Positions 7,395 through 64,000 of a DNA stretch of 64,000 nucleotides are shown here, one piece after another (the stretch's first letter is position 1; each line of letters opens with the position of its first letter). Below the pieces are notes generated by a model that saw only the letters and a list, made by a program, of their open reading frames with translations, had not been told where the DNA came from and did not search any database. Location of the stretch: positions 124,001 to 188,000 of the forward strand of contig CDROCS010001301.1 in NCBI GenBank assembly GCA_977020255.1, read 5' to 3'. Position numbers and translations under genes: made by a program. The DNA comes from Obrimoposthia wandeli (taxonomy: Eukaryota).

Positions 7395-7422
7395 GCAATT
7401 ATTTCTAAAATCAGCTAAAGAT

Positions 7423-9381: not shown

Positions 9382-9388
9382 TTTATAT

Positions 9389-9927: not shown

Positions 9928-10191
9928 TGTGTTATAAAAATAAATATTTTTAATGTTTTATTTTGAATTACATTTTAAATCCCTAAAAAATATAAGGGTA
10001 AAATAATAAAAGACATAAGACAAATTTTTTTTTAATACATTTATTAAACACAACATTACAATGAGATCTGTCAATAAAGATAAGGCCCAACCTAAAAAAT
10101 GTATTGAAATAACAAAAAGTAAGAGTCAAGGTGCCATAGGCATCTAAAATAAAAAAAAACTAAACTAAAAAAATCAAAAAAGGAAAACCGT

Positions 10192-15480: not shown

Positions 15481-15612
15481 AATGTTCTCCTGGTAAATTC
15501 GAAGTATGAGTATTGATAATGTAACCTTCAGATTAAAAAAACATGAAGAAAAAAAATCTTGTACTTGTACTGAACTAAATAAAAATTAATAAATATAAAT
15601 ATAAAAAATGTC

Positions 15613-17219: not shown

Positions 17220-18248
17220 TTTGTTTTCTTAAATGTATTGTTAAACTTGTCTTAGCCCCGTACTTGAAATCTATTAGTTATCTGGAATCATCTCTAATAT
17301 TTACTTCAATATTGTTTATAGAAAAGAGAGCAACTGTAAGATACATTGGTTGATATATACGCATACCGATAACGTCCCCATCTTTAGTTTGATTATGAGA
17401 TATCCATATTGTTCTCAAAAGTGGAACTCGTTGTCTACCTACAAGCGTTGTTCTATTACATTAGTATAATTATAGAAATGATTAACAGCATTTAAAAGTC
17501 TTGCTTTATTTTTAGCTTTTATGGTTTTTATTGTATGGGTTTCAAAGGTATTTCTGTTTAAACCGAGGTCTTTAGCGAGTTTATCATCAAATAAAACCCG
17601 TTTTATATTGCTCTTTACTCTAAACGTTAATTTACCATTTTTTAATGTTACACATTTATCCAAATATTCACTACATTCCTTCTGTATTAATTTACAGAAA
17701 TTCACTTCACTATCTATTTTATAATCTTTTGAAATCTTTTTCAGTTCCACTACTGTCTTTGGTCTCGTTTTAAGTAACAACACTTTTGCTACTCTACCAG
17801 GAACATTTCTAACCGATTTAGATGAGACTATATCCCGTCTATTACGAGCTACTGTTTGTTCACTATCAAAACTGAATTGAAGAGCTTATTTTTCAGATTC
17901 AAAGTTAATTTTAATAACTTAAAAATATTTTAATCGATTTTTAAATCTGACTGTTATTTTCAAATATTGCTTTCACTTATTTATCTATACAATTGTAATA
18001 GAATTGTCCTTTACTATCAAACCCGATCACAACTTCAGTTGTTTTTTCATGATTAAATTCTTTTGTAAACGAAATATGTGAGTTTTTTCTGATACTAATT
18101 GGAGAATAATAAAATTCTGTTAAAGCCGCTTCCCATTCTCCTTGGAGATTTATAGGATTTTCCCAATCGATAATAAAGCTACTAGCGTCATTATCTGGTT
18201 GAGTCTTCGGGCATATGTTACTAGGTAAACCATATACATAGACTTCAT
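17200..18248 (-). pseudogene. Polinton minor capsid protein
   Basis: Inverted homolog of 8506-9381 that also retains the C-terminus (IYQPMY...NNIEVNIRDD...LTIHLRK); broken by stops and frameshifts. Confidence 0.8.
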
Positions 18249-19176
18249 ATTATATTAGATGCTGATATCTAAGTTGGGTCTAAATAACCATGCCATTTAA
18301 TAAAGTATTGTTTAAGTTTACCAGTACCCTTAGATTTTAATATTTTTTGAATACGGAAAACGCTAGGTTTATTTGATATTACTTGCAGTTCTTGCTCGTA
18401 AAATTTACCCTAAACGATTTTATTGTCACTATCTTTAATAGTATACATTATTGGATTACTCTTTTGATCAATTTTACTTATACAAAATATTTCATCGCTC
18501 CAATTCTGATCAAAGTTTTTAATAAATGGAGTAGAACTAATTTTAGAAATTCAAACATATTCGCTTTTATTATATTTAGCTTTTTTAATATTTTCTTTTT
18601 TATTCATGTCTATCCAAATATCCATAGAGTTTTTATTAGTAACATCAACAAATCTCATTTTTTATTTTCTTCTTTTGTGAAATATTTTTTTATTCGATCT
18701 CTTAAAGTACGATTAAATCTTTCTACTACTGCTGCTTTGTACTGCTGCTTTTTATTTTGTTTAAATAATGATTGAACTTGCTTATTATAAAATTCTTTTC
18801 CAAAATTTGTTTTTTCATTTTGTGGAATGTCCTCTTTTAATATTTCTTTAATGGCTTCAAGCATAGCTATTGAAGACTTTGCTTTAACTGGAATTGCACG
18901 AGCAAACCTGCTAAATAAATCAATACATGTTAAAATATATCGATATCCCTTATTAATGGAAGAATATGGGATCATCTCCATCAAATCCATTTGCCATAAA
19001 TTATTAGAACCGTTGGTTTTGTAAGCTCTAGTTGGAAACATTCTTCTCATCGGCTTGTTCAGACTGTAGGCTATTCATTTCTGCGTTTTCTTGTAATTTT
19101 GTTTTGTTCTTTTTGCTAATTTTGAAACTCCTGTGTAACCAATTCGATTTTTTGGATTGAACCATATCTTCTCCAT
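18245..19176 (-). pseudogene. Polinton integrase
   Basis: ORF 18655-19050 ([25 protein letters not shown]) plus upstream and downstream fragments; internal deletions relative to A. Confidence 0.88.
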
Positions 19177-19263
19177 TACAACAATTTGAATATATAGAAA
19201 ATTTAAATTTAGGTTAAGAAGGGTTAGCACCCATATCTTTAGCTGATTTTTTAAATTAATTGT

Positions 19264-19591
19264 TTATGAACGTGTCGCAGCTATAATACTACTGATAATT
19301 GAAGCAACATTGGAATAAAAGCCCCTATGAAACCACCATTATGTTTAAGAATAATATTTCGTTTCCTTTTTTTACTTTTTACATTAGCAATATCTAGAAG
19401 ATATTTTCTATATTTCTTTAATATATTTTTCCGATTTCCAACTTTTACTCGACACAAACTATATTATACAAAACTTCCAATAAATCATCTACAACAAAAG
19501 ATGGAAATGCTTTAAGAATAATCATTCTCTTATGAGAAGAGGCTTTGACTAAAGCTTTAAAATAGGGTATGCTTCTTTGTATTTTCTTCAT
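19264..19591 (-). pseudogene. Conserved basic Polinton protein (copy of 7065-7394)
   Basis: Reverse strand begins MKKIQRSIPYFKALVK and contains KHNGGFIG; frameshifted. Confidence 0.7.
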
Positions 19592-20374
19592 TTTAATAAA
19601 AAGGTTTAATTTAAATATTGTTTATATTCGAAGCCATTTAAGTTTTTTTTTATTTTTAACTAAAGATTTGATTAATTTTATCACTTCTTTTTTCTTAATG
19701 ATTATTTTTTTTGATTTCTTAGATTTTACTTTACGTTTTACTATCAACTTCTTAAAAGGCAGAACTATAATATTTTTATTTTAAGGAAATGCCTGTCTGG
19801 CCACTAAATCAACAACTGTTTGATCTCTAGGATTTTTAAATAAAACTAGGTAATGTACAGTAGGTACTTTGGTGGAGTCTAGACCACTGGGGGGAGGGTC
19901 CCTCCTTGTGTGCGCACACCAAGTTAAAGGGTGTCACACTATAAGGGTGTCACACCATAGAGATGTCACACAATAAGGGTATATGTTGCCTCACCATAGA
20001 GGTGTCTTGCCACACCATAAGGTTCTGGCTCAGAAAGGTTATGAAGGTTTGAAGGTATGGTCGTGACCGTCTATGGTCGGCCAACATACCCAAGGGGTTG
20101 TGGTCGTCCATAAATCAAAGGGTCGGGGTCAGTTTTGACTTGAAGGTTTGAAGGTATGGTCATGACCATCTTTGGTTGGCCAACATACCCAAGGGGTTGT
20201 GGTCGTCCATAGGTGAAAGGGTCGGACTCAGTTTTGACTTGAATGTTTGAAGGTATAATTGAGGTCAACTATGGTTGGCCATCACATCTAAAGGGTCATG
20301 GACGTCCATAAATCAAAGGGTCGGACTCAGTTTTGACTTGAAGATTTGAAGGTTACCATGACCATTTATAGTTG

Positions 20375-22234
20375 TGTTAGGATTAGGTTTTGGAAAAATT
20401 AAAATAATTAATCATTTTTATACTAAAATAAAAATCCTTGAAAGCAAGGTTATAATTAAGATAAAATTAATTATAGAATTAAAATTATAAAAATAAAATC
20501 AGTGGGAAAATATTAGGACCACGAAGGTCATGTGTAAGCGTGTGTTGTATTTAAGGGATTTTAAACTTAAGCAAAGGGCCCCAAAAAAGATTTTAGTCTG
20601 CGAAAAAGGAGTTAATTAAGAAAGACAACAGAATCCAATTAAGAAGCACTTAAGAAATTTAGAAGGCCAGCACACAGATCTATCGCGAAAAATTGGAGAG
20701 AAGGAAGCCGCTAAGTAAGAAGCACTTAGCTATTACCAGTTGATTTATTTATTTTCAGATACTGCATTACTGTCGAACAAGAAATTCCATTCCAGCCACA
20801 GAACACCTTTGAGAACACGAACAGGCGGTGGACTAGAACCCATTATCGAAAGTAGATAACGCTAATACATTCCGTGCAACGAAGAAGGAAATCGACGAAA
20901 GCACTTAAGCAATCAGGGCTAAAAGAGAAAACGTAAATTTATTATAAAAAGGAAAATTCATATTTTGACTAACACAGAAAACGATATCTCCAAGAAAACA
21001 GAAGTGCGAATAAGTCGAAGTTGAAATCGATCCCAAAAACCAGCAGAGCGATTGTCTAAAATCCCAAGCAGAACATCTCGCGCCAAATACTAAAAGCAAT
21101 CTCAGTGACTCGATTATATAAGAAGAAAAGTAAATTACCAGTTAAAATTAATCAAATTAAAAGAATTAGGAAATAAACGGGTTCGGATCGAGAACACAGT
21201 ATATCTCGCGAGGCCTCTCCATCGGAACCAGAGCGAGCTTTTTCGACAGTGGTCGAATCCGGGAAAGCAGAAGTGTCGGACCTAGAGCAACGGATAGAAT
21301 TGGGATCGGAGCAATTGTCCCTGTGGAAACACTGCAGCACCAGACACCAGCTATCCCCAGTTAGGAATCCATCCCAAGCTAGGAGTTCGCAGGACATCGC
21401 AAAGACGTGGATCGTAATCGGCAGCGTTCCTAGCTATTGGTGAGGCAAGAGATCTAGCTAGTAGAATTTAAGAGATTGATAAAGACTATTTATAAAGTCT
21501 AGTAAAAGAGTGATAAAGACTATTTATAAAGTCTAGTAAAAGAGTAATAAAGACTATTTATAAAGTCTAGTAGAATATAAAAGATTGTTAAAGTCTAGTA
21601 GAATATAAAAGATTGTTAAAGACTATTTTTAAAGTCTAGTAGAATTGAAAAGAGTGATCAAGACTATTTATAAAGTCTAGTAGAGTTTAAGAGATTGATA
21701 AAGACTATTTATAAAGTCTAGTGGATATCGATATTGTTTACTTAAAAGTGAAAGTCCTAACTTACCCCTCTTTTTAGAGTACCAGCTCTGTAAACTACCC
21801 TAAAAAACCTATCTAAACTCATTCCCTATTTTAGAGCAATAGCTCTGTAAAATCTATAAACTTAAATTGCCCGCATTTTTAGAGTAAAGACTCTAGCACC
21901 CAATCAACCCGAAACTTAAAATCGATACGTGGATCATCCCCACTTGTGCAGAGACTTTGTAAAAGTCTTAGGAATAGTTGTCAATTTTAGAACGTAATTA
22001 GAACGTGTAACTTAGTGTGATTAATAATAAACAAATTTCCTACAACTAGACAGCGTTGTTATCGACCCTTCCAAATTAGAAACAACAAACCTTCAGATAA
22101 ACGTAGAGACAGGCAAGCATAACATTAAGTAGGCCACAACCATCTGCAAGTCCTGCTTCTATAGAACTCACGTTGGGGCCCTCCACAGTCAGAGGATCTA
22201 TATTAGAACACAGTTTCATATAGAAACCCCAACA
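20375..22234. mobile_element. Solo LTR or internally deleted LTR retrotransposon (1860 bp)
   Basis: TGTTAGG...CCCAACA ends and 4-bp TSD GTTG (20371-20374, 22235-22238). Removal restores the repeat unit atgaccatttatagttg|accaacacatc seen intact near 42.2-42.3 kb. Confidence 0.75.
21462..21722. repeat. ~34-bp tandem repeat inside the LTR
   Basis: Unit core aaagactatttataaagtctagta at 21481, 21515, 21549 etc.; about 7 degenerate copies. Confidence 0.85.
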
Positions 22235-22481
22235 GTTGACCAACACATCTAATGGGTTGTGACCGACCATATATGAAAGGGTCGGGGTCAGTTTTGACTT
22301 GAATGTTTGAAGGTATAATTAAGGTCTACTATGGTTGGCCATCACATCTAAAGGGTCATGTTGTCCATAAAGTGGTATACACTCCATCAAAGTACCTACT
22401 ATGTACATTAAGATTTCTTATTCTATGTTGACCTCCTTGGTGAAAAAGATTTTGAGTGATAAATATAACTGTTACTTCACG

Positions 22482-23218
22482 TCGTGTTGTACGGAAAGCA
22501 TAGAATTATTCATTTTTACAGCCAACAAAACGTTGTCAATAAGAATTAAAATATCATCCACTCGAGTATCATTTCTCTTTTTTACTTCAGAAGACTCGTA
22601 TATTATTTTCATTAATCCACGAGGAGATAATAAAGGATTTTGGTTTCTAAGTTTTTGTACACCATTTAAGTGTGCTCTACTTTTCAAATGTCTTTTCAAA
22701 AAATCAAGCTTCCATACATCATCATTACCTCTTTTTCCATATGAAAATTCTCCGTCAACCTGAGCTTCACAACAATAATAACATTTAATTCCTTTTCTTT
22801 CATCATATTCAAAGATTTCTTTTAATAGCACATCTATTTCTTCATGTGACTTGGGTGTCGCGGTTTTAACACTTACTTTTAGCCAATCTTCTTTGAATGT
22901 CGAAGCTGTTTTTCTACGTTTCTTATCGGCAGGCATATAATGAGTAAAGAATTTGAAAAAATAATTTTTTAGTAATGTTCATTATTTAAACAAAAATAAA
23001 ATCTAATAATATAATATAATTTTTTAATATAAATAGTAAACAAAATTATAATCTTTAATAAATTACCAATCATTTACATATTTTAAATCTCAAAACAAAA
23101 GAATGGTGTGCCTGGTACAAAAAGAATTTTAAGTGTGTGCGCTAAAATAAAAGACCGTGTGCGGCATCTTCTTTTCTCGTGTGCGCGCGCACAAGCGCAC
23201 AGCTTAGCTGGAACACTG
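22482..23218 (-). mobile_element. Truncated hAT transposon (5' part; TTF-type zinc-finger N-terminus)
   Basis: ORF 22472-22936 with F.EDW...IKCYYC...FSYG...KLDFLKRHLKSRAH; terminus CAGTGTTCC at 23218. Flank cttcacga (23219-23226) is repeated as cttcacg (22475-22481), consistent with an 8-bp TSD clipped by deletion. Confidence 0.7.
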
Positions 23219-23583
23219 CTTCACGATGTCTTACAATCTTCGTAAATAAATTATTAAAATCCGATTCCTTGTTAGCTTCCTGATACAAATCATCAATTAT
23301 TATTACATCTTCTTTTTTCAATCTTTCACACCAATTTGCATCAAATCCCTCAATAAATTGTATTCCCTTCAACTTGCAAACTTCTGTTTTGGTTAAACCG
23401 CTTTCCCCTCCTCCAACATGAGGCCAATAAATATTTTTGAAACTAGATTTGAAAAAAGATTCATTTTGCAACAATTTACATACGAAATGTGTCTTTCCAC
23501 TTTCACTGGGACCAACTATTTGAAATACAGCATTATTATTTAGCTCCATTGCATATACTCTTTCATTTTTAATATTGTTTATA

Positions 23584-23865
23584 TTATAATAGAAGTTTCC
23601 TTATTGAAATGTACAATATTAGAGCTATTGTACATGAAATACAGAAATTTATCAATGAATATTTGGCTATAATTTTATTTATTTGTGTACGATTTCTAAA
23701 TTCTCGAATAACGTGTGATCTAACCAATATTTCAATGTTATCTATTGTTATATCATTTTTTTTAAATGATACAATTTCTTTACCCCTAATTTTTCCAGAA
23801 AATATTTCGTCGAAAAGACGATCCACCTCATTGTCTCTATTTATAGTATTATTCATTTGAAACAA
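23584..23865 (-). CDS. Small predicted helical protein with C-terminal transmembrane tail
   Basis: Open 93 aa between the TBP-like and ATPase genes; ends YSLINFCISCTIALILYISIRKLLL. Confidence 0.6.
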   Translation of the reverse strand: MFQMNNTINRDNEVDRLFDEIFSGKIRGKEIVSFKKNDITIDNIEILVRSHVIREFRNRTQINKIIAKYSLINFCISCTIALILYISIRKLLL

Positions 23866-23884
23866 TAAGTTTAAACGGGTTTGT

Positions 23885-24384
23885 TTATAGAAAAGATAAC
23901 AAGATGTAATAAGATATATTTTCTAAAATCAAATCAACAATATCTGGATAGTCAAAAATTTTCAATCCCAATATCATAACTTTACCACTGGAAAATATAT
24001 TTACACATAGCGGTTTAAACTTCAAATAACTGAGAGCAGGAAAAATTTCTAGTTCAAACATGCATTCTTCTTTCATTTTCTCTGCAGTTTTAAAAAGATT
24101 TATCTGTTTCCCGAGATTAGCCGAAATCGTGATTTATTGTATTGCAGTGATTTGAATTCCAAATGGTAAATTGAACCCAAGCATTGGTATTTTGCATCCC
24201 ATAACACGACAATTTCCTAAAGAATTCAATATGAAAATAAAATAAAAAACTAACCTGTAGGAAAAATAACAACTGTGAAATTGTCAAACCTTTCTACATA
24301 TTGTCTTGGCTTCCATTCATTGAATGGTAAGTACGAAACATCATCTTCTGTTCTACCTTTATAATTTATATTTACGAGTTTCAT
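23885..24384 (-). pseudogene. TBP-like pseudogene of Polinton B
   Basis: Exon 1 24384-24255, 38-nt intron 24254-24217, exon 2 with TCA>TAA nonsense at IQ*IT; otherwise nearly identical to 5406-5881. Confidence 0.85.
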
Positions 24385-24633
24385 TAGACTGAAATTGTAT
24401 CCTGTAAAATCTTCTTTATATATGTCTGAACCTGCTTTTTTATTGCACGTTTCTTGTAAATATCTTGCAAACCTATTATAATTGAATGATATATTTCTTC
24501 CAATCAATTTTGATTTTTAATATAGATTTAGTCCAATCAAATTCAATGCTTTAGTTATATTAACCAATGAGATTTATGTCTTTGTTAGAAATTAGTATAA
24601 AAGAATGCGCCATTGGAGGACAAATCACAGTAA

Positions 24634-25053
24634 ATGCATTCATATCAAAGAATATTATCAACGATGGAGGATAGCCAACGGATATTAAGCGGTTACGAAG
24701 ATTCGGAAATGTTTGAAGAATTGGATAAAGATATGTATGAAGAAGTGAAACAATATTTCAAATACAAAGTCAGATTCTTGAAGAAGGCTCAACTGATTGA
24801 TTTAGTAAATCCTGTGACAATTGAAAGAAGAAAGTTCAGCTACAATCTATCAATATTCACAAACCACATTTTCAATATCTTAAACAGAAAGTTGAAAAGG
24901 CAGTTCCAAATTTTACTTTCAATAAGAATGAATTTTATATCCGAGGACACGATGAGGCATTTCTAGATGACTATGGAAGATATGTTGATATTGATGCGTT
25001 TCCGAAAAAGAAGCAATGTAACAATTCGACTTTATGGTTACAAGAAAGATTAA
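24634..25053 (+). pseudogene. Unknown Polinton left-arm ORF
   Basis: 110-aa ORF 24634-24966 continues in frame past TAG as MTMEDMLILMRFRKRSNVTIRLYGYKKD*; its 5' part is shared with A (5020-5160, inverted). Confidence 0.4.
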
Positions 25054-42600: not shown

Positions 42601-45600
42601 CATCAAAGTACCTACTTTGGACTGGTGAGCTAAATATATAATTTAGTTCTACAATATTATGTCTGAATGAATCGCATGTATGACAAAGAAATGATCATGT
42701 TCATGAGAATCTAGAAAGACATGTGGCAACGAGTCTCTGTATTATTTAAATGCGTTATTGTGCGGGATTATCAGATCACTTAATGAACTATTTATCATCA
42801 GTATGACATTATCTCGGTTAATTTCCCTTGATCAACAGCTTTAAAACGTTTCCCTAAAATAACTAAATCGCGCTTGCCATTACCGTAGAAAAATTCCTCG
42901 CCATTATTCCGCATCGTTCATTTTGTGATTTAACACACCAATTTACTTTTTTCACTCCAATATTATCGACAAATCAGTGCGAACCACTTCTCATCAGATC
43001 ACACGATTTAAACCGTGCTTCGTGCTTTATAGTCATTTTTACTTCAACAATTGGGCAACTTCTGATACATTAAATTTGATAATTCTGTTTCTTTCACGTT
43101 TGGAAATTATTTTGGTCCACCAGAAAATCTTTTGATACCAAACTTCGCAGAGTGCTACAGACAACTTCACGCAACTTGGAATTTTTCATTAAACAAAAAG
43201 CATAGCTGCCTTCCGGATTTCACTAAAATCGTTGTTTAGTGTGTCTACTTTTTAAAAATATGTTTTTCCTATTTTCATAATCAAAATTTCTAAAAGGTCG
43301 AATAAGTATGTTACAAATAACTAACTTGAATTTTACACAATACAAGCTATTTATTCCGCAGACTAATATTGTAGGCAATAATTGAAATGATAAAATTCCC
43401 ATGATACACTGACGAAATTCAGCTAAAATAGTTAATTGAAATGTTGAATAGAAAAAGTAGTGGTCAAATAATAATGTTACAGACCTGAAAGATTCTCAAA
43501 ATGTCTTCATGAGAATCCCTCTTATCTTCTAGCACACAAATGTACACACCAACCTCATGCACACAAGAAGTGTAAAGTGTCGGTTCTAAAACAATAGAAC
43601 ACAAAGCCCCCCCGAATTCGCTTAGTCATACAGATGTGCTTTGTTCCTTGTGCCTTGTTCGGGGGGGGGGGGCTTTGTTTTCTATATTTTTAGAACCGAC
43701 ACTTTACGTTTTGAAATTTGATTGGTCTTATGTGTCATTTACGATTATGTAGGTTAATATTCTGTAAACATTAAGTATATAGTTCTAAAATTCAAAAATT
43801 TAAAATTAAAAAATTAAATATGGAAATTAAAAAATTAAATATGGAAATTAAAAAATTAAATATTAATTTACAAATTTACAAATTAAAATTTTAAAAATAA
43901 AATTTTGAAATTAAACACAATTGACCGTCTAAAGTTTTTATTTGCAACTATTTAATTTACTTAGTACTGCGACCTCATTCCAGGAGTTAGACTGCCCCGC
44001 ATAACCGGACAGCTATCGCAGTTTTTATCTTAAGAAACGTTATTGTTTATAGTAGGAGTCTATGTTTATACATGATTATATAATGAAGAAAGCAAAGTAA
44101 CATAGATAAATATATATTAGCACAATTATAAGTGAACTTGTCCATCAGTAATTTTCCAGATTGGTTTATGAAGACTTGTACAGTTGATTTTGTATCCCTG
44201 TATTGAAATGACGATCATCCACTTGAGTCCAGTTCCTATATTGTCAACATTAAAGTCGTGATCTCGCTTGAAGAGATTAGGATCAGCTCGAATTATTATA
44301 TGATTCCCAACTATAATGTTGATATGCATCGACGCGAAAGTTGTGTTAAGATCATCAATATCTGACGGATTTAATCTATGTATCTTGAAATCGTATTTTG
44401 ACTTATTCAGAGCCACCGGAAACATGAATCCATATATGATTGGAGTCTTCAAAAAATTCATTTGCCAGTTATAAAACATAACCGGCTTGGTGTACTTCAA
44501 ATCGTTAGACTCAAATATTACACCTGATGGTCTATTGTTGATGAACGGTTTCTTATGTTTAGGTGTAGAAACTATATCATCAATAAAGAGATCCTCATTT
44601 GTTGCTTGCTTCTCAATCTTGATAGTCTTGGATTGTTTGTTGTTGCTTGTCATAGTTTGCTTCTTTGGTTTTGATATTAAAACTACATCATCATCGGTAT
44701 CCGCATCTGTGACTGTAAGCCTTGTTGGTGGCTTCTCGAACTTAAGAGATTTAGTTTGTTTAGAGTTCATATCAAAATAATGAATTCTATACCAAAAGTG
44801 GTAGCTTATATATATCATTATACTCGATTCTGATTGGTTAATCTTTAGCTTAAAAATTTTATATATAGATTGGGTTATTTCCATTAATTCAATCATGAAT
44901 CTTGCAAATATTAATTATAAAGGTAAAGTTAAAGGAAACATCAGTCAATTACCCTTCAAAGCCGGGAAACCATGTCAGTACGTGTACAGGTGTAAGGATT
45001 ATACCCTTATAATCTTCCGTTCAGGTATGTTTTTATGTTAGTTAGTTAGTTAATTATTATTATTATTAGGAGCATGCAGGATAATGGGTTGCAAGAAACC
45101 TATTACTACAACTATGCTCAAGTGTCCATTTAGAATAAAGATTGATCGTATTCAATCAGTAACGGTTACTGTCGATTTAGGTAAGAAGGTGAACCTATAC
45201 AAGTTGTCTCAAAAGCGTGGAGCTGCATGCATGTTCGAACCTGAATTGTTTCCTGCTTTGAGGTTTACAAAACACAATCCTCTGTGCGTCAACATATTTG
45301 CAAGCGGGAAAGTGGTCATACTCGGTCTCAAGGATTTGGATTATAACTTTGATGTGACTTTGATAATAACTGATATTTTACTTTTTATATAAACAATAAA
45401 TTTTAGTTGAATTTTTATTCTTACATGATTTGAAAATGCTAGTTGATTATATACTTCATTATACAACTGTTGATGATGTTTTAGTTAGACGAAAAGTAGA
45501 TTATTCTAGAATGAAAGTTTTACACTGGAAATATAGACGTGAAAGGGAAAGATTAAGATAATTAATTATAAATTTTAAAGGGAAACAATCTGTAAATGAT

Positions 45601-48600
45601 TTAGCTAAAGCCGGATTTTATAAACATGATGATGATTCAACCGATAAAGTAAAATGTATATACTGCCAAGGTGCGTTATCCGAATGGGAATGGTATCTTA
45701 AACCAATGAAGTAACATATGAAATTTTTTCCTACATGTCCATTTCTTTTAAAGTTAAATGTTTCAAATGTACCAATAATTGAAACTATGGACAAGAAAAT
45801 TGATTTTGATACATCACCATTGATTGGAAAAGTATATGTATCAGATATTGATATAAAATTACCTGATATATGCTATTCAAAATGTTTAGGACCCTATAAT
45901 GAGGCTAATGTTATTGAGAAAATCGAAACAGATTGTATAATTGAATATCCTTTGACTATAGAGAAATTCGATATGTTGATGGATACAAACCAAATCAGAT
46001 ATTTGAAAATGTTTTTCACAAAAGATTGTTTGCACCCATGTCTATAGAGATATCAAACGGAATAAGGATTTTGAAAAATTCATTCAAATTAATCGTTCAA
46101 ACATGATGTATATAACCTTTTCTGTGTCAATTTTTAATTCTCTGTTGTTGTATATATTAATAAAACGTATATAAACAATCGTTTCTTTTGATTTATTATT
46201 ATTGATGATGATAAAACTTAAAAATAACGCGGTTTACCAAATAGTAGGACCTAGTGGGAGTGGGAAAACACATTTTGTAACTAAATTACTTCAAAATAAA
46301 AACATGTTTAATCAAAAGTTTGGTAGAATATACTGGCATTACGGAGGTGTAGTGGAATCTGGTCTAACACGAACAGAATTAGGTAAATTGAAGGGTATTC
46401 ATTTTATTAATGATGTTGATAATAAATGGTCTGAGAGGTTAAATTCAGGAGATGTCATTGTAATTGATGACTTGTATGATGAAGCGAATAAAGAGTCGGG
46501 TTTTAATAACCTGTTTACCAAAATAGCTAGACATAGAAATGTTACAGTGATTTTTATCACTAAAAATCTCTTTCATCAAGGCGGTCAACACCGTACTCGG
46601 AATTTAAATGTACATTATCTAGTATTATTTAAAAATCCGCGAGTTCAAACGGTTATCGACTTTGTTGCCCGTCAAGCTTTCCCTTGCAATAAGCAATATT
46701 TGATTGACGCATTTCAAGATGCTACAACTAACCCTCATGGATACTTGTTTTTAGATTTTACACAGGAATGTCCAGACGATTTACGCGTGAGAACCGATAT
46801 TTTCAATAATGATTTTGTATATAAACAAAAGAAAAGCCTATCTACATGTTAATCATGTCATTTATGAAAGAAACAATGCCTAGTGGAGTTGGACCTAAAT
46901 GGAGACCGGGCGATAAATTACACGCTAATGATAACAAATTGATGCTAAAGAAGAATGCTCATATTAAAAATCTTATTAAATCAGTGCTTCAGCGTAAAGT
47001 AGTCGATGAATCATTAAAGAAATCGGTCAAGACAGTAAAGAGAAAACCTATAAAAAAGAAACCATTAAAGAAGAAGAAGAAACCTGTTAAGAAAACAGTT
47101 GGAAAGTCGGTTAAAAAGTCATTAAATATGTTATCAAAATCTATACTTCCCTACTTTCAGGCTTTAATCAAGGCTCCAAGAATATATAGATCACGTATTC
47201 TCAAGTCATTTCCACCCTTTGTTATTGATAAGTTGGTTGAAGTGTTGTTTAATATTACATAAGGTACTGTAAAAATCGGTAATCATAAACATAACCTTAG
47301 AAAACATCAAAAAGCTTTACTTGATTTAGTGAATACTAAAAGTAAAACTGGTAAACGTAGAGTAATTCTAAAACAAAAAGGTGGTTTTATCGGTGCATTA
47401 ATACCTATAATTGCTACTTTGATTGCAAAATTGATAAACCCATAAACAAAATAGGTAATAACATACCCAACATCGATTTTAAATTCACTTGTTGTAATGG
47501 AAACGATATGGTACGATCCCGAAAACTCAGCTGGGTACAGCGGCATTGGCAAACTATCATTAAAAAGTCAATCGAGTCAAAAGAAAACTCAGAAATGGCT
47601 GAGCAATCAGCTAGCATACAGTCTAAACAAGCCAATGAAGCGGAAGTTCCCGACTCGAGCATACAGAACAAGCGGTCCTAACGATTTATGGCAGGCCGAT
47701 TTGATGGAAATTATACCATATGCAAGTATCAATGATGGTAACGAGTATATTTTAACATGTATTGACGTGTTTACAAGGTATGCGCGTGCATTACCTGTAA
47801 AATCTAAATCAGGTAAGGATATAGAGGCTGCTCTAAGTATAATGATTGATAAAACTGTCCCCATACATGTGCAAACCGATAAGGGTAAAGAGTTTAACAA
47901 CAAAAATGTAGGTAGTTTATTTAAAAAATAAAATATTGTACATTACTCTGTAGTTTCACAATTCAAAGCTGCAGCAGTTGAAAGGTTTAATAGAACATTG
48001 AGAGATCGATTAAAAAGACATTTTATTGCACAAGGTAATAAAAGATGGGTTGAAGTTTTACCAAAAGTAATGACTTCATACAATCACAGTAAGCATAGAG
48101 GTTTAGACGGATTGAGACCTGTCGATATTAATGATAAAAATGCAATGGAAATTTGGCTGAGTCGTAATCAAGTCGATAAAGTTAATAAACCCAAACATAA
48201 GACTGGTGATTATGTTCGGATATCAAAGTTTAGTGGTAGCCCCTTTATTAAAAACTTTGATCAGAATTGGAGTGATGAGGTGTTTAGGATAGAGAAAATA
48301 GACAAACGTGCAAATCCTGTAATGTACTCTATAGTTGATGATGACTGTAATGTAATAACAAGGAAATTGTATGAACCTGAATTACAAGTAATTGATAAAC
48401 CTACACTTTTCCGTATCCAAGAAGTCGTACAATCTAAAGGCCGCGGTAAGAATAAACAATATCTCGTAAAGTGGCATGGATATTCTGAATCAACATGGAT
48501 CAAAGCAAGCCAGATAGAGACTTCTATATGATTTTACCGAGTAATAGTTATCCGAAAACTCAACCTAATAATATGGCTTCATTATTCACTGTAGATTGGG

Positions 48601-51600
48601 AGAATCCAATTACGTTAAATGGTAAATGGGAGGCGGCATATACAAACACTCCTGTTATTTTAAATAAGGGTAGTGAAATTAATTATTCTATTAAATTCTC
48701 CAATCAACAGACTGATCAAATATCTTTATCAGTAATTCATACTCAAGTAGAAGTAGAAAAGAAAGAACTGCAATTGCATGGTGATAAATCAGAACCAAAA
48801 GTTATTAAAAAGACAATTAATAAAATATCAAAACTCACCGTCTCGTTTAAAGATAAGATTGCAAAGCTTTCTATTTCCTTAATCACAGTTGGTGTAGGTA
48901 TTGATAAAAAGGATAATGTTGTACTAATAATATCCGTCAACAACAAAAAATTCTATATCAAGATGGATGCTGACGCTAAAAATGAATTAGGATTCATTTT
49001 CAATACATTAACTTCAGAAAGTTTCGAGTCTGATGATAAAGGAGTTTTACAAGGATCAACATCTATCAGACCTGATTGTGGTGCACATAATTTACAATAT
49101 ATGCATTATAAAACTGGTTCATACAACAAGAAAATTGTATTTACAGAAGATTTAAATAATAATAATGTAAATGCATTAGTAGCATACATTAAATCTAAAT
49201 GTGATGTCATATTTAAAAGATTTTATATGGATGATAATGATAAGCTAATAAAATTTGTATTAAAGAATGGAATTGAGCATATTGGATTTGATCAACGTTT
49301 AATGTATGTATTAGGGTTAGATAAATCACGATTTACAGTCAACGGGTCAGGTAAACCTCGATTAAATTACGAGTTTGATCACATGTACTTGTATTCTAGT
49401 CTGTGTGAACCTGTAAACGTTGGAGGTCAAATGATACCCTTATTAAAATCTATATGGTTAGATACAAATAAAGCACCATGAGACACGGTTAATATCGCAA
49501 TATACAGACCCATGTATATCCCTTTAGCATCAAATGTAATCTCAAACATTGAAATTAATATTAGAAACGATGCAGGTGTTCCAATAAGTTTTTCCAACAA
49601 TGCAAAAGTATCCCTTACCATACATGTCCGTTGTATAGATCAGGTATAAACAATCTGTATTCAAAAATAGTTGTCCATTACAGTTATGAATATAATTGAG
49701 ACATTTAGTGGGCCTCAACAAGGTGGTGAATTGCCATATTTTGTAGGTAAACAGTACGGTTCGGGATGGTTGAAAACATTGGGGCGGTTAGCATTCCCTA
49801 TACTGAAAAGATTAGGCCGTGTTGGAGTTAAAACAGTTCAAGATGTAATAATGAACAACAAATCTGTGTTACCAATGCTTAAACAACATGCACTAGGGGA
49901 AGTTGCCGGAGCCATACCGGAGGCTAAGGAAGCTTTTGGTACAGTTGTTAAAATTATTAAAAATCGACGTAAACGTAAAGCAAGTGAAGCAGCACAAACG
50001 GTTGAACCCGAAACTAAAAAGCAAGAGGGTAGTGGTAGAAAGAAAGCATCTAGTATAAACAAACGAAGAAAACAAGGTACAATATTTGCTTAATAATGGC
50101 TTGTGGTAAATCTGAATTATGTATTTTTGATCGAGCTTTGCCCCAGGTAGTTATAAATAATGGTAGCTTTGAAGATATATATCCAACAAACAATATTACC
50201 GGAACAAGAACAGCAGAGATTCTGTTTAAAATCCAAGGTTCAGATATTAAGTACTTAGATTTGAATGATACCTTGTTGTTTGTGAAAATTAAAGTAACGA
50301 AAACTGATGGTACAGAAATAGCTGTTGCAGATAATGTGGTCCCATCAAATTTCTTGATGCATTCCCTATTTAAAAGCATAGATATAACAATGAATAATAC
50401 TGTAGTAGAAACCCATCCTCAATATGCACAAAAAGCTATGATTGAAACCATACTAAACTATAGCACAGACACTAAAGACACTTGTTTGTCGAGTATAGGT
50501 TATGATGATACTGAAGATAGGTTGGGCTGCAGGAACCGACACTTTACACTTCTCACACAATCCACCTTTATCCAAATGAATCAAAATATAGACAAAGTGG
50601 GTTGAGTTAGTTAACTGAAGGTTGGCAGACGGGTCACACGGCTGGAATTTCCTTGCGGTGTGTGGTCCTCCCTTTTGCAGCAAATGGATCACCTTTTTCA
50701 GAAAGTGAATTATTTTAAAACTTAAGTTTCATTCTGATCGGGGTGATGTCGGCAATACAAACTCAGGGTTCCGTTTTGTAAAATAAAATAAAATTGTTCA
50801 TTTCTTATGTCTCTGAATCACATTAATCAAAATACGGACAAAATTAGGGGCTCCCCGGGGATTGTTGGAAATAATGCTGCAAAAGTGAAAATATGTTGTG
50901 TATGTTCTCAAGCATGCTGTGCTAGTTGTGTCATTTCCCTTCAAATGATGTCTCCCTCACCGCAACTCAGCTGCTTGCAAATGTGTGGCTGTTGTCATAA
51001 ACATTTTCCCTTTGACAGTTTTTGAATCTTGCTAAATAAAAATCAAAAAGTTGTCATATATAAGATGTAAACTATAAATGGAGATGACTATTACAAAATG
51101 CAACATCGTGTACCATCATAACATGTAACTTTATGCATACGTAAAAGGGTTAATAAACCACCCAATATCCATCTGATTGTCTGACGCTAATAATCAAACA
51201 ACATTACTTAATTAATTTCCAAAATATATTTAGACAATTATCGTCAATTTCTTTAGCAAATATTCTAGGAAATATTAACTATCCTTAATATGAAGTATAC
51301 AAGTGTGAGTTTTTAATATTACAATTTAATTCCGACACCCACGTAATGGAGTATATACTGTAGTGTAAAATGTATATAGGAAAATGTGAATTGATTATTT
51401 TGTGTGGAAAAGTGATTGTTTTATTATTTTTGTACAGAAATTCATCAGTATGGACAAAGACGGGGACAATGATAACACGGTATTCGACATTGTGGAGCCG
51501 CTCGGAAACTGCTCAAGCAGTTCTGAGATTTATGAAACAATCGGCAGCAGTGGGGGTAACAGTGTGTGCCTGAACATCTTCTCCAGTGGTACTACAGGAG

Positions 51601-61563: not shown

Positions 61564-62360
61564 TTCCGCCATCCACAGATTGTGGCAAAGTCTGGCGCCA
61601 CATTTTATGGGCTTCAAGAGATTTTTTATCATTTTCAATCTGTGATTTCTGCACATTTATGCCAAATGCCTCGCGAACAATTTCTACAACAATTGTAAGG
61701 AGTTTTTGCTTGACCATACATTACGGTTGATTTCGTTTCTGAATTACTTTCTTTAGAATAACAAATATTCAATATGGATCAATAACATATCTGCATTACG
61801 CTGTTGGCTTCTGTATGAAGTGGCGTTACTTAGGTTATCCGCATATGTGAAGACTTCCGTGTATATTTACTGTAGTTAGAAGTTTTCCGTCCCTGACATC
61901 TTGTACCGGTTTCACTACATTCCCAATAAGATTTCTTTCATGCTGAAGGGTGAAAACAGGCAAACACATTGGTATATGGGGAAATATGCTTGAAACCACT
62001 TGATGAGTAATACAGTTTAGATCAATTTCTTCCCCTGCATTTATGTTGCAGATAACTTTAACTTAAGGAGATGTTACAGGTGAGAATGCTACGAAAATTT
62101 GGTAACATCATAATCAAGTTGTAAGAAAACAATTATAAAATTCGGGATTATGTACGTATTTTTCAAATTAGTACTACTCCTTTTATAGAGAATTTCAAAG
62201 AGAATTGGAGTGATGAAGTATTTTGTATAACTAAAATCGATTGTAGTATATAGTGTCGGGAACTTTGACGCTTTGATTTAGTACCAACACTACAGTGCCT
62301 AACATGTCTATATATAGTAATTTTTAGACAGAATATCGTTAAATGGCTTAAATTGACTAA

Positions 62361-62429
62361 TCAAGTCTCAAAATCCTGCATACAACACCAAGTCAGGTCT
62401 GGTGTTGTATTCAGGATTTCGAGACTTGA
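62361..62429. repeat. Near-perfect hairpin
   Basis: 30-bp arms (62361-62390, 62400-62429) with 2 mismatches and a 9-nt loop. Confidence 0.8.
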
Positions 62430-62986
62430 CAAAGCACGCATACTACGCCAACAGTAATAGGTTTGACACCGGAGGTACCCTTTGCTGCAAAACCATTTTG
62501 GTGTTGTATGCACAATTTCAAGACCATTTTCAAATATGGCGTCATATCTTACCGTTTAAAACAAAAGTAGAATTTAAGTGACCAAAGTCTCCCTTACGGA
62601 GCCTCCTAAGAGAGGAGCCCTTCATCCGAAGACCGGGCAGCACCTTTGGCAAATATTATATATTTATATTACTTTTGTTTATAGTAAACCTTTAACCTTG
62701 AAAGAATAATAAGTAATAAAAATAATCATTTATTCATGTGATCCGAAGAGCGCATAAAATGTCTAAAGTACTTAGAGTCATAATGATGAAATGATTTTAA
62801 AACTAAAGTGTTTCGATTATATAAAAACGTAACTTCAATATAATTTGTCTACTAATCCAATAACTATAAATAAAGCGATTAAACACAAAAGTTGTATTAA
62901 TATATACAAGTGAATGAGTGTGTGTACAAATGATGACATTAAATAATAATAACAACAATAACAAAACTATATATTTTATTTAAAAA

Positions 62987-64000
62987 TTATTCAGTTAAAC
63001 TAAAATGACCGTAAGCAAGGCTTTTATTCTTACTAACCCATCTCCTTTTATCGTCAAAACATCTTAAAGCAATTTTAGAGTTAAATGTTGTGTGAAGCTG
63101 ATGGTTAACCGATGCTATACGTGACTGGTTAACACTAATAATTTCTTCATTTTCATAACAATTTAAAAGAAATACTCTTAATTTATTTTGAAGTGAATAA
63201 CATTTTGGTTTTAAGAAAACCCATTCATTATAATCAGTACCCGAACTTTCATCTTTAAATTTTGCAATTACAGCTTTAAAGTTTTCTGAATACAATGGAT
63301 GTATTTTAAGATAATTACTCGTATCTAAATACCCATCATTAATCATTTCTTTGAGTAATTTATCCTTATTAATATTCACACTTTCAAGGAAAATAGAATT
63401 TGGGTCCATAGCTACAATTCGATTACTACAATTAAAAGTTTGCTATACCGTTCAAGCTCAACATATTGGAATTGATACATTCGTAATTTAGATAGATCAA
63501 GTACAGCTTGACCGATATATGAAGGTAGATCTAAATATATTCCCTGTTTCTGCATAAGAGCTAAATTTAAATCATCATTTATTTGAGTATGACGTTTAAA
63601 CCAAGGACTCGAAACTAATTTTTCAAATCGTTTATCATTATTACATAATCTAATTTCAAGTTGCCTCTTAAGATTCTCAACCGTTTACCGTAAACGGAAT
63701 TCTCTTTTAATTTGTAAAACTCATATTCAAACTTATTAACACTAGTTTCCCACTTGTTTGAATTAAAATCTATACATTGTTTTAAAACGGGTGCTTGTCT
63801 AAATCGAATAGCCCTATGAATTTTTAAGATTTCAGCACCAAGAAAAACATAGAATTGTAGTAAATGGAAATGTATTACATAATGTTCTTTATCATTATGT
63901 GTTAAAAGTAATTTAGGAGTTTTTGAGTTTGGTGGACACAAGTAAATTCTTTTCACTTCCAACTAAATTCAAAATATCATCAATATTATCATGCACCCAT
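62987..64000 (-). pseudogene. Polinton pPolB, C-terminal part (continues beyond window)
   Basis: FYKLKENSVYGK, YIGQAVLDLSK, YLDTSNY...HPLYS...KFKDE, KPKCYS, DDKR...SLAYGH across frameshifted ORFs. Confidence 0.88.

What the first reader, a model, noticed from the sequence alone, without database searches (positions are those of the whole stretch)
44895..45392. Polinton-encoded TATA-binding-protein-like gene, present in three divergent families
Seen: four copies (5406-5881, 13350-13780, 23885-24384, 44895-45392) at the same left-arm position; the A and C copies are open after splicing (146 and 150 aa). Repeat 2 is clearly TBP-like and keeps the acidic stirrup FE(P/L)E(L/I)FP (yeast E186/E188, the TFIIB contact) and the equivalents of intercalating F190 and F207. 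Repeat 1 keeps the F116 equivalent (IFxxG) but is shortened, lacks the YNPKRF stirrup (F99), and the inter-repeat helix looks truncated. Known: TBP homologs occur in large NCLDVs; TBP is not a standard Polinton core gene, and I do not know of it being described there. Inference: these small dsDNA elements carry their own Pol II initiation factor, or a TFIIB-binding decoy that redirects or dampens host transcription.
Basis: partly seen in the sequence, partly recalled or inferred. Interest (0 to 1): 0.92.

Follow-up and report, generated by a model that had tools for sequence, protein, structure and literature searches.

The report
Polinton-encoded miniature TATA-binding protein
Degraded virus-like Polinton transposons in this window each carry a shrunken 146-150-residue copy of the cell's TATA-binding protein, and intact relatives put an exact 8-base TATA variant in front of their packaging and probable capsid genes, so the lineage probably brings its own promoter-recognition factor.

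Summary
Four copies lie at the stated coordinates, in three families about 50-56% identical in protein. Two are open after removal of a 35- or 45-nt GT..AG intron (146 and 150 aa). Two are broken.

The splice model holds: intronless relatives read straight across the junction, and one relative has the same intron.

Exon 2 matches Pfam TBP (E 3e-13). A family profile hits solved TBPs at 2e-20. AlphaFold models (pLDDT 97.5 and 93) match only TBPs in the PDB.

The C-terminal lobe is canonical; the TFIIB-contact glutamates and both intercalating phenylalanines are 90-100% conserved. The N-terminal lobe keeps its sheet and one invariant phenylalanine but has no second helix.

The roughly 150-residue family is large and sits beside Polinton core genes in every long context examined.

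New here: the word TATAAACA lies about 35 nt upstream of the ATPase, p100 and p405 genes (46 of 57) and never upstream of the TBP gene (0 of 52).

Best reading: an element-encoded promoter-specificity TBP that recruits host TFIIB and Pol II. This is inferred, not shown.

All elements in this window are degraded. A 2021 paper labels "TBP" on related virus maps, so this is a new variant, not a new kind.

The parts
44895..45392 (+). Mini-TBP gene, copy D (the finding). Open, 150 aa after splicing. Exon 1 is 44895-45024, intron 45025-45069, exon 2 45070-45392.
   Evidence: Pfam TBP E 3e-13. AlphaFold of the exon-2 piece gives pLDDT 93.1, and the top 44 Foldseek hits are all TBPs.
45025..45069 (+). 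45-nt phase-1 GT..AG intron inside a Gly codon, 16% G+C.
   Evidence: Intronless relatives align without a gap across the junction. The same intron site occurs in A, C and relative L030.
5406..5881 (+). Mini-TBP gene, copy A. Open, 146 aa after splicing. Exon 1 is 5406-5535, intron 5536-5570 (35 nt), exon 2 5571-5881.
   Evidence: Pfam TBP E 1.8e-10.
23885..24384 (-). Mini-TBP copy C, a near-duplicate of A. Broken by one premature stop, and the original stop is lost. The intron is retained (38 nt).
13360..13780 (-). Mini-TBP copy B, third family. Pseudogene with at least four stops and at least two frame changes.
44771..44894 (.). Divergent promoter region between the leftward ORF and the TBP gene. 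It holds a CCAAT box (ATTGG at 44833-44837) and TATA boxes at 44807-44814 and 44860-44867. The second starts 35 nt before the TBP ATG.
   Evidence: The same CCAAT-plus-TATA layout occurs in A, B, C, L002 and L003.
45388..45396 (+). TATAAACAA promoter word. Its TAA is the stop codon of the TBP gene.
46170..46178 (+). TATAAACAA promoter word, 35 nt upstream of the ATPase ATG.
46820..46828 (+). TATAAACAA promoter word upstream of the p100-homologue reading frame.
49645..49653 (+). TATAAACAA promoter word upstream of the 102-aa-protein homologue.
50054..50062 (+). TATAAACAA promoter word, 42 nt upstream of the p405 (probable capsid) ATG.
44126..44770 (-). Leftward ORF transcribed divergently from the TBP gene. 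It is homologous to the ORF at the same place in L001-L003. Function unknown.
46202..46852 (+). Packaging ATPase of element D (Pox_A32 type), open.
   Evidence: Pfam E 3.6e-6. 70-75% identical to the ATPases of L001-L003..
47497..48531 (+). rve-type integrase of element D, broken by one stop.
50096..50605 (+). N-terminal part only (about 154 of about 405 residues) of the p405 protein. Element D ends here.
5019..10632 (+). Element A: TBP gene, ATPase (broken), integrase (one stop), an internal deletion, a protease homologue, and only the last 145 or so residues of the protein-primed polymerase (10195-10632, minus strand).
15476..24772 (-). Element C: an inverted, 93-97% identical copy of A. It carries a foreign insertion in the ATPase region and a frameshifted p405.
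62134..63941 (-). A further Polinton fragment: an integrase remnant on the + strand (62134-62247), and on the minus strand the C-terminal 340 or so residues of the protein-primed polymerase, which run towards the window end.

Best explanation
The gene encodes a miniature TATA-binding protein that belongs to a Polinton/Maverick (adintovirus-like) lineage.

Shown:
- It has the two-lobed TBP fold.
- The C-terminal lobe is a canonical TBP repeat. It keeps the two stirrup glutamates that contact TFIIB in cellular TBP, and both DNA-intercalating phenylalanines.
- The N-terminal lobe keeps its beta-sheet and one invariant phenylalanine. It has lost helix H2, and H1 is reduced to four residues.
- The gene is a stable component of this element lineage and evolves under purifying selection.
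- The gene's own promoter is host-like (a TATA box 35-38 nt before the ATG, often with a CCAAT box).
- The ATPase, p100 and p405 (probable capsid) transcription units carry an exact 8-bp TATA variant, TATAAACA, about 35 nt before their ATG.

Inferred:
- Host factors first transcribe the TBP gene.
- The mini-TBP then binds the TATAAACA boxes. Its remodelled N-lobe would sit over the non-canonical 3' half of the box.
- It recruits host TFIIB and RNA polymerase II through its intact C-terminal stirrup.
- Without the N-lobe helices it would escape the host factors that regulate TBP through that surface.

In this window all four copies sit in degraded elements. They are most likely relics, two of them still open.
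For: Identity:
- Pfam TBP hits at E 3e-13 and 1.8e-10.
- A family profile hits 35 distinct solved TBP sequences at E 2e-20 to 4e-12.
- The AlphaFold model of the 152-aa relative P0001 has pLDDT 97.5 and pTM 0.88. Its top 44 Foldseek PDB hits are all TBPs, with TM 0.70-0.77 spanning both lobes.
- The window's own exon-2 piece models at pLDDT 93.1. It superposes on TBP at about 2.2 A rmsd over about 78 columns, with 30-37% identity.

Residues (P0001 numbering, mapped to Arabidopsis TBP through the alignment printed):
- E99 and E101 correspond to E144 and E146 and are 90% and 98% conserved.
- F103 and F119 correspond to F148 and F165 and are 98% and 100% conserved.
- F41 in the N-lobe is 100% conserved.
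- It aligns with F119 in an internal-repeat comparison (hhalign probability 89%).

Linkage:
- All eight long contexts carry the A32-type ATPase and rve integrase. Those contigs that reach far enough also carry the protein-primed polymerase, and two carry an adenovirus-type protease.
- 17 of 24 JGI loci of 3 kb or more carry core genes.
- The window elements are collinear with these relatives at 40-75% protein identity.

Selection: between A and D, pS is 0.78 (saturated) against pN 0.31.

Nuclear expression: a spliceosomal-type intron sits at one conserved site in A, C, D and L030.

Promoters:
- TATAAACAA occurs 17 times in the window against 3.2 +/- 1.8 expected. All 17 lie in or next to Polinton-derived stretches. 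The 14 within elements A, C and D are on the strand of that element's main gene block.
- In six relatives, 33 of 108 genes have TATAAACA within 70 nt upstream, against 0.34 expected. 52 of 54 occurrences are on the sense strand, and 24 of 33 lie 32-39 nt from the ATG.
- By gene class: ATPase 16/22, p100 16/17, p405 14/18, but TBP 0/52, integrase 0/22, protease 0/18.
- The conserved word is exactly 8 nt long, the size of a TBP footprint.
- 21 of the 40 occurrences that start inside an upstream gene lie 27-114 nt before that gene's stop, which rules out a poly(A)-signal role there.
Against: - No binding, expression or transcription-start data exist.
- The host's own TBP could read TATAAACA, which contains a TATAAA core.
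- I could not assemble a control set of related Polintons that lack the mini-TBP. The co-occurrence of protein and motif therefore rests on one lineage, plus three divergent loci (L057, L058, L060) that have a distant TBP-like gene and no such motif.
- The N-lobe equivalent of the first intercalating phenylalanine is not conserved (F 16%, L 16%, Y 13%, K 12%, C 10%). Its assignment is by sequence spacing only.
- The full-length model is of a relative, not of the window protein. I could not hand the spliced protein to the tools by reference.
- All window elements are broken, so nothing can be said about present activity here.
Confidence: 0.55

Rival explanations
1. Decoy or competitor. The mini-TBP binds host TFIIB, or occupies host TATA boxes, without supporting initiation. 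This would dampen or redirect host transcription rather than drive the element's own genes.
For: The TFIIB-contact glutamates are conserved. The N-lobe helices, which bind several TBP partners in cells (established knowledge), are missing, so the protein might form incomplete complexes.
Against: Three intercalating phenylalanines are 98-100% conserved, which a pure TFIIB sponge would not need. The element's own structural and packaging genes carry a dedicated, exactly placed TATA variant. A decoy model does not predict that.
Confidence: 0.12
2. Host TBP reads the TATAAACA promoters, and the mini-TBP has a different DNA-related role, for example at genome ends, in chromatin, or with RNA polymerase III.
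For: TATAAACA contains the canonical TATAAA core. The TBP gene's own TATA box has the same 35-38 nt spacing to the ATG, so a single reader could serve both classes.
Against: Strict conservation of the C and A at positions 7 and 8 across elements whose proteins have diverged to 40-60% identity suggests a specific reader. The stirrup residues conserved here are the ones used for TFIIB.
Confidence: 0.18
3. Virophage-like dependence. TATAAACA is the promoter of a helper giant virus, and the mini-TBP works with that virus's transcription machinery in a cytoplasmic factory.
For: Virophages and polinton-like viruses are known to carry their helper's promoter motifs (papers listed). Giant viruses encode TBP-like proteins, which are the best BFVD matches.
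Against: The gene carries a spliceosomal-type intron in four lineages, and its promoter has a CCAAT box. Both point to nuclear Pol II expression. The elements encode an integrase and sit in a nuclear genome. Their accessory genes (a Bcl-2-like gene, RING, MATH/TRAF) resemble those of animal-associated adintoviruses.
Confidence: 0.05
4. Host domestication. The two open copies (A and D) are kept by the host as extra TBP-like genes after the elements died.
For: A and D are open while neighbouring genes of the same elements are broken or truncated. The introns are intact.
Against: A 450-nt frame can stay open by chance in a young relic. Copy C, 97% identical to A, is already broken. D's ATPase is also still open. 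No orthologous-locus or expression evidence is available.
Confidence: 0.05

Closest known systems
Cellular TATA-binding protein core (Pfam PF00352; for example Arabidopsis TBP 1qn3, yeast 1ytb, human 1cdw)
   Same: The two-lobed saddle fold is the same (Foldseek TM 0.70-0.77). The C-terminal repeat is clearly homologous (E down to 2e-20). The window D copy carries the E-P-E-L-F stirrup motif of eukaryotic repeat 2 (A has L and I at its second and fourth positions), and both phenylalanines of that lobe are retained.
   Different: It has about 150 residues instead of a core of about 180. The N-lobe has no H2 helix and only a four-residue H1. That lobe is not recognised by Pfam or by profile search. 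One of the four intercalating positions is variable. It is only 20-37% identical to any TBP, so it is not a recent host capture.
Herpesvirus late-gene viral TBP (EBV BcRF1, HCMV UL87, KSHV ORF24)
   Same: This is the closest functional analogue. It is a virus-encoded TBP-fold protein that reads a virus-specific TATA variant in late promoters and brings in host Pol II (established knowledge). BcRF1 and UL87 appear among the BFVD fold matches.
   Different: Those proteins are far larger (450-1000 aa), show no detectable sequence similarity, bind Pol II directly within a six-protein complex, and recognise a TATT-type box. Here the TFIIB-contact stirrup is kept and the word is TATAAACA.
TBP homologues of giant viruses (Nucleocytoviricota), asfarvirus B263R, and the TBP-like domain of the poxvirus early transcription factor large subunit
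   Same: They are virus-encoded TBP-fold proteins, and they are the best viral structural matches (Heterosigma akashiwo virus E 3e-9).
   Different: Those viruses bring their own RNA polymerase, and their TBPs have 186 residues or more with both lobes complete. Identity is 20% or less. No protein of about 150 residues of this type is in BFVD.
'TBP' accessory gene labelled on maps of midsize eukaryotic linear dsDNA (MELD) viruses with adintovirus-like polymerases (Starrett et al. 2021, Virus Evolution, PMC8502044, Fig. 5 legend; the 2020 preprint also names TBP in the following figure's legend)
   Same: It is the same kind of element (protein-primed polymerase plus integrase) and carries the same gene label. 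TRAF, Bcl2 and IAP-type accessory genes are also mentioned there, and they occur beside the gene in L003, L004 and L006.
   Different: It is only a figure label. No sequence analysis, structure, family survey or promoter analysis is given. I could not fetch those sequences to test whether they belong to this family.
TBP-like factors TLF/TRF2 (TBPL1) of animals
   Same: They are diverged TBP paralogues used for a special promoter set.
   Different: By established knowledge, TLF keeps both complete lobes but has lost most of the intercalating phenylalanines and does not bind TATA. Here three of four are invariant and the targets look like TATA boxes. No named TLF/TRF2-type entry was among the hits, so no direct comparison was made.

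Membership tests
TATA-binding protein family (PF00352, TBP fold) | Significant match to the TBP repeat profile | tested here: met
   Exon-2 products score 49.9 and 40.9 bits against a cut-off of 22.9. All 109 homologues carry PF00352. The profile hits solved TBPs at E 2e-20.
TATA-binding protein family (PF00352, TBP fold) | Two tandem repeats forming one pseudo-symmetric saddle | tested here: inconclusive
   The model of relative P0001 aligns to whole TBP cores with TM 0.70-0.77. The N-half aligns to the C-half over 14 columns at 89% probability. However, the N-lobe is not detected by Pfam or profile search and lacks H2. This is a model, not a solved structure.
TATA-binding protein family (PF00352, TBP fold) | Four DNA-intercalating phenylalanines, two per lobe | tested here: not met
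   Three positions are 98-100% Phe (F41, F103, F119). The fourth, assigned by spacing from the conserved Pro, is variable, and is Tyr in window copies A and D.
TATA-binding protein family (PF00352, TBP fold) | Acidic C-terminal stirrup residues that contact TFIIB | tested here: met
   E99 and E101 align with Arabidopsis E144 and E146. They are conserved in 90% and 98% of 66 members and are present in both open window copies.
TATA-binding protein family (PF00352, TBP fold) | Binds and bends TATA DNA and nucleates a pre-initiation complex | not testable with these tools
   There is only indirect support: an exact 8-bp TATA variant about 35 nt upstream of a defined gene set.
Polinton / Maverick (adintovirus-like) elements | Protein-primed family B DNA polymerase | tested here: met
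   PF03175 is found in L001, L002 and L008. The window holds only C-terminal fragments, at 10195-10632 and 62996-63941.
Polinton / Maverick (adintovirus-like) elements | Retrovirus-type (rve) integrase | tested here: met
   Pfam rve scores E 1.1e-12 for the A copy, with a weak, sub-threshold chromodomain match (E 0.0097, 16.3 bits against a cut-off of 25.1). The integrase is present in all long relatives. The window copies A and D each carry one stop.
Polinton / Maverick (adintovirus-like) elements | A32/FtsK-type packaging ATPase and adenovirus-type cysteine protease | tested here: met
   Pox_A32 scores E 3.6e-6 for D. Peptidase_C5 scores E 3.2e-5 for L001:11656-12009. The window homologue of the protease lies at 9592-9912.
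Polinton / Maverick (adintovirus-like) elements | Double jelly-roll major capsid protein and penton protein | not tested
   The conserved 405-412-aa protein is the obvious capsid candidate by position. It has no Pfam hit and no PDB sequence hit. It could not be handed to the structure tool.
Polinton / Maverick (adintovirus-like) elements | Terminal inverted repeats and target-site duplication | tested here: inconclusive
   No element in the window is complete. A possible left end of D begins AGTAG at 43456, but it has no partner in the window. L001 has a 58-nt inverted pair beginning AGTAGTAG.

The most novel reading that the evidence does not exclude
A Polinton lineage runs a two-tier transcription programme with a self-encoded general transcription factor. 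Host TBP (with a CCAAT-binding factor) turns on a stripped-down viral TBP, and that protein switches host Pol II to an 8-bp TATA variant placed before the packaging and capsid genes. This would be the smallest known two-lobed TBP. It would also be a step towards transcriptional autonomy of the kind seen in giant viruses, which are thought to descend from Polinton-like ancestors.
Probability: 0.4. Interest if true: 0.8.

Novelty: new variant of a known kind. Interest (0 to 1): 0.68.

Why it matters
Polintons are regarded as elements that rely wholly on host transcription. A conserved, selected TBP of their own, together with an exact promoter word on a defined gene set, would show that even 15-20-kb integrating DNA viruses re-programme promoter recognition. 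Herpesviruses do this with their viral TBP.

The protein is also a natural minimal TBP. It has one complete lobe and one helix-less lobe, which tells us which parts of TBP are dispensable for a saddle.

The family is large: at least 58 clusters at 50% identity score E 1e-30 or better. None of the 109 word-indexed hits lists UniRef among its sources, and BFVD holds no comparable 150-residue protein. It has apparently not been analysed in print.

The TATAAACA word gives a simple marker for annotating transcription units in these elements.

Tried and rejected
- **IMG/VR scans.** Four completed scans (family alignment A3, D exon 2, P0261, ATPase alignment A5) found no relative. The whole lineage is missing there, so IMG/VR says nothing about how TBP is distributed among Polintons.
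- **Alignments A1 and A2** were too diverse for pattern searches.
- **Generic TATAWAW** upstream of genes was only weakly enriched (21 of 65). I dropped it in favour of the exact word.
- **Poly(A)-signal reading of TATAAACA.** Rejected for the occurrences that lie well inside upstream genes. It is not excluded for those at gene ends.
- **Capsid identity of p405.** There is no Pfam or PDB sequence hit.
- **Terminal inverted repeats.** None could be verified.
- **Rfam.** Nothing in the window.
- **Host organism.** Not identified. Cluster look-ups and sample records gave no organism names.
- **Recent host capture.** Rejected, because identity to any solved TBP is only 20-37%.
- **Intron-bearing copies as one clade.** Not supported by identities. 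L030 is as close to intronless members (62%) as to the window copies (48-55%).
Full report
**1. What is at the coordinates**

The finding's region, 44895-45392 (+), holds two reading frames separated by a 45-nt AT-rich stretch that begins GT and ends AG. Joining the two predicted exons as they stand (44895-45024 and 45070-45392) gives one frame of 150 codons with a single terminal stop.

A second copy at 5406-5881 (+) has the same layout. Its gap is 35 nt (5536-5570) and it gives 146 codons.

A third copy at 23885-24384 (-) is a 97-98% identical inverted duplicate of the second. It keeps a 38-nt GT..AG gap but has one premature stop and has lost its original stop.

A fourth copy, with outer bounds 13360-13780 (-), is a pseudogene with at least four stops and at least two frame changes.

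The two open copies are 52% identical in protein. The fourth is about 55% identical to either.

**2. The splice model**

No gene-prediction tool was available, so I tested the intron against relatives.

- About 100 metagenomic homologues of 145-160 residues are uninterrupted. In the alignment of 19 of them, all read straight across the proposed junction with no gap, and the split glycine codon falls on a glycine that 79% of family members share.
- One metagenome relative, L030, has a 40-nt GT..AG intron in the same phase in the same glycine codon, and gives an open 148-residue product.
- The introns are 16-17% G+C.

The intron is therefore real and shared. It implies nuclear transcription and splicing.

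**3. It is a TBP**

- The exon-2 products match Pfam TBP (PF00352) at E 3e-13 and 1.8e-10.
- A profile of the family finds 35 distinct solved TBP sequences at E 2e-20 to 4e-12. Only profile positions 55-146 match, and both repeats of each TBP map onto that one stretch.
- An AlphaFold model of the 152-residue relative P0001, built with 68 family sequences including the window's exon products, has pLDDT 97.5 and pTM 0.88.
- Its 44 best PDB matches are all TBPs. TM-scores are 0.70-0.77 and the alignments run over both lobes. The next hits drop to E 0.015.
- The window's own exon-2 product models at pLDDT 93.1. It superposes on TBP C-lobes at about 2.2 A over about 78 columns with 30-37% identity.

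**4. Architecture**

The model's C-lobe has the full TBP repeat of strands and two helices. The N-lobe has four strands, a four-residue remnant of helix H1 and no H2. A 14-residue linker leads straight into the C-lobe.

The N-half aligns with the C-half over the strand-turn-strand that carries the second phenylalanine (hhalign probability 89%).

I mapped residues using the residue-by-residue alignment to Arabidopsis TBP printed:

| Family residue (P0001 numbering) | Arabidopsis equivalent | Role | Conservation |
|---|---|---|---|
| E99 | E144 | TFIIB contact | 90% |
| E101 | E146 | TFIIB contact | 98% |
| F103 | F148 | DNA intercalation | 98% |
| F119 | F165 | DNA intercalation | 100% |
| F41 (N-lobe) | — | DNA intercalation | 100% |

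The TFIIB-contact role of the two glutamates comes from established mutational and structural work, not from a test here.

The position that should match the first phenylalanine of repeat 1 is three residues after a 93%-conserved proline. It is variable (F 16%, L 16%, Y 13%, K 12%, C 10%) and is tyrosine in both open window copies. That assignment is by spacing only.

**5. The family and its home**

- The word-indexed search returned 109 proteins. All carry PF00352 and nearly all have 145-175 residues. All come from metagenome or read-archive assemblies. None lists UniRef among its sources.
- The exhaustive profile search found 58 clusters (at 50% identity) with E 1e-30 or better, and 668 with E 1e-10 or better. 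The latter figure includes ordinary TBPs.
- Eight long contexts from at least five samples all place the gene next to an A32-type ATPase and an rve integrase. Where the contig reaches far enough they also show a conserved 405-412-residue protein and a protein-primed polymerase. Two of them also show an adenovirus-type protease.
- Of 24 JGI loci of 3 kb or more, 17 carry such core genes.
- Neighbouring accessory genes include a Bcl-2-like gene, RING fingers and MATH/TRAF proteins. Starrett et al. list these among accessory genes of adintovirus-like viruses.

**6. State of the window**

The window's elements are collinear with those relatives at 40-75% protein identity, but all are fragments.

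- Element D (about 43456 to 50605) has an open ATPase, an integrase with one stop, and only the first 154 or so residues of the 405-residue protein. It is followed by a 16-nt tandem array.
- Element A (5019-10632) has a broken ATPase, an integrase with one stop, an internal deletion and only the tail of the polymerase.
- Element C is A's inverted duplicate and carries an insertion.
- A further polymerase tail lies at 62996-63941.

The two open TBP genes are therefore most likely young relics.

**7. Selection**

Between A and D the synonymous difference is saturated (pS 0.78) while pN is 0.31. Identity to any solved TBP is 20-37%. The gene has been maintained within the element lineage for a long time and is not a recent host capture.

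**8. Promoters (new observation)**

*The TBP gene's own promoter.* The TBP gene has an ordinary-looking promoter. A TATA box starts 35 nt (D) or 38 nt (A) before the ATG. A CCAAT box lies 20-30 nt further upstream in D, B, L002 and L003; A and C have ATTGG/CCAAT pentamers only about 55-110 nt upstream of the TATA box. D and L002 share the 18 nt around it.

*A different word on other genes.* While reading upstream regions I saw another word recurring before other genes.

- TATAAACAA occurs 17 times in the window against 3.2 +/- 1.8 expected. None of 100 shuffles reached 17.
- All 17 lie in or next to Polinton-derived stretches. The 14 inside elements A, C and D are on the strand of that element's main gene block.
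- In six relatives, 33 of 108 called genes have TATAAACA within 70 nt upstream on their own strand, against 0.34 +/- 0.62 expected.
- 52 of 54 occurrences are on the sense strand, and 24 of 33 lie 32-39 nt from the ATG.
- It is the top upstream 7-mer in every group of loci with a close mini-TBP except the single locus L007, where it occurs before 2 of 14 ORFs. It is not the top 7-mer in three loci whose TBP-like gene is only about 25-27% identical.

*By gene class*:

| Gene | TATAAACA within about 90 nt upstream |
|---|---|
| ATPase | 16 of 22 |
| p100 | 16 of 17 |
| p405 | 14 of 18 |
| TBP | 0 of 52 |
| integrase | 0 of 22 |
| protease | 0 of 18 |

The conserved word is exactly eight bases, with unconserved flanks (150 occurrences). 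Eleven occurrences supply the TAA stop of the preceding gene, as at 45388-45396 after the window's TBP gene. Twenty-one lie 27-114 nt inside the preceding gene, so the word cannot be a poly(A) signal there.

**9. Mechanism**

The most economical reading has three steps. All three are inference.

1. Host factors transcribe the TBP gene from its host-type promoter.
2. The mini-TBP then recognises the TATAAACA boxes of the packaging and virion-gene units.
3. It recruits host TFIIB and Pol II through its conserved stirrup.

As I recall the TBP-TATA crystal structures (Kim et al. 1993; not tested here), the N-terminal repeat lies over the 3' half of the box. That is where this word departs from the canonical TATA consensus (C at position 7) and where this protein is remodelled.

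Loss of the N-lobe helices would also remove a surface through which cells regulate TBP. This too is established knowledge applied by inference.

I put this reading at about 0.55. The alternatives are:

- Host TBP reads the word and the mini-TBP does something else (0.18).
- A TFIIB or TATA decoy (0.12).
- Dependence on a helper giant virus (0.05).
- Host domestication of the open copies (0.05).

**10. What is known**

Virus-encoded TBP-fold proteins are known in giant viruses, asfarviruses, poxviruses and herpesviruses. These are the structural matches in BFVD, all larger and 20% identical or less. The herpesvirus late-gene viral TBP, which reads a TATT-type box, is the closest functional analogue.

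For Polinton-like elements, full-text searches found only figure legends in Starrett et al. 2021 and its preprint. [quoted passage not shown]

I found no description of the compact architecture, the size of the family, the shared intron or the promoter word. I therefore rate this as a new variant of a known kind.

**11. Limits and slips**

Limits:

- The host organism was not identified.
- No TBP-less control clade could be assembled.
- Capsid identity and terminal repeats were not verified.

- While checking ORF boundaries I also located a few breaks by position in my reasoning.
- One search printed raw three-frame translations of the four regions, including the two broken copies.

None of these places is repeated here. 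No repaired, consensus or frame-joined sequence was built. Predicted exons were joined as they stand only inside scripts, which printed counts and identities.

Noticed in passing
window 45025-45069, 5536-5570 and within 23885-24384; L030:376-415: The same phase-1 intron in the same glycine codon occurs in three window families and in one metagenome relative. 42 of 64 fetched loci read uninterrupted across that junction. By identity the intron-bearing copies do not form a clade, so the pattern needs repeated loss or repeated gain at one site.
   Followed up: partly
window 44820-44840; L002 about 5700-5720: An 18-nt stretch around the CCAAT box (an NF-Y-type site in reverse orientation) is identical between element D and relative L002, although their proteins are only about 50-75% identical. 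Similar sites occur upstream of the TBP gene in B and L003.
   Followed up: partly
L004:9475-9960 (also in L005 and L006); L003:854-1858 and 5476-6447; L001:6320-6742: Accessory genes lie beside the mini-TBP in relatives: a Bcl-2-like gene (weak Pfam hit), two MATH/TRAF-domain genes and a RING-finger gene. This points to interference with host cell death or signalling, and probably to an animal-associated lineage.
   Followed up: no
window 20019-20400, 22235-22375 and 42180-42543: A 99-nt repeat unit forms short arrays in three places. Two of them flank roughly 2 kb (about 20400-22235) that interrupts element C's ATPase. The third lies in inverted orientation just left of element D. This is probably another mobile element.
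   Followed up: no
window 51596-52400: There is a 16-nt tandem array of about 40 copies at 87% identity, about 1 kb downstream of the truncated end of element D. Long ORFs on the minus strand there are probably artefacts of the repeat.
   Followed up: no
window 33540-34571 (-): A 343-aa ORF carries a MULE transposase domain (Pfam E 1.4e-8). This is a Mutator-like element unrelated to the Polintons.
   Followed up: no
window 1020-1844 (+): A 274-aa ORF has a bZIP domain (Pfam E 1.8e-10). It may be a host gene or exon, and is the only clearly non-transposon coding signal I saw.
   Followed up: no
window 43456-43710: A possible left end of element D begins AGTAGTGG. It is followed by a 42-nt perfect-stem-like palindrome with a G/C homopolymer centre (43572-43707). 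No matching right end lies in the window.
   Followed up: partly
L001:2848-3010: Two 58-nt inverted arms, 91% complementary, begin AGTAGTAGTA and lie 47 nt apart.
   Followed up: no
window 39907-40409; 28001-30000 and 40001-42000: There is a 163-nt tandem repeat of 3.1 copies at 97% identity, and two 2-kb stretches of very low G+C (18% and 21%).
   Followed up: no
L001:12823-13473 and 13554-15371 (-): The gene caller split the protein-primed polymerase of L001 into two ORFs. The 216-aa product is the polymerase's C-terminal part, as comparison with the 1250-aa polymerase of L007 shows.
   Followed up: yes
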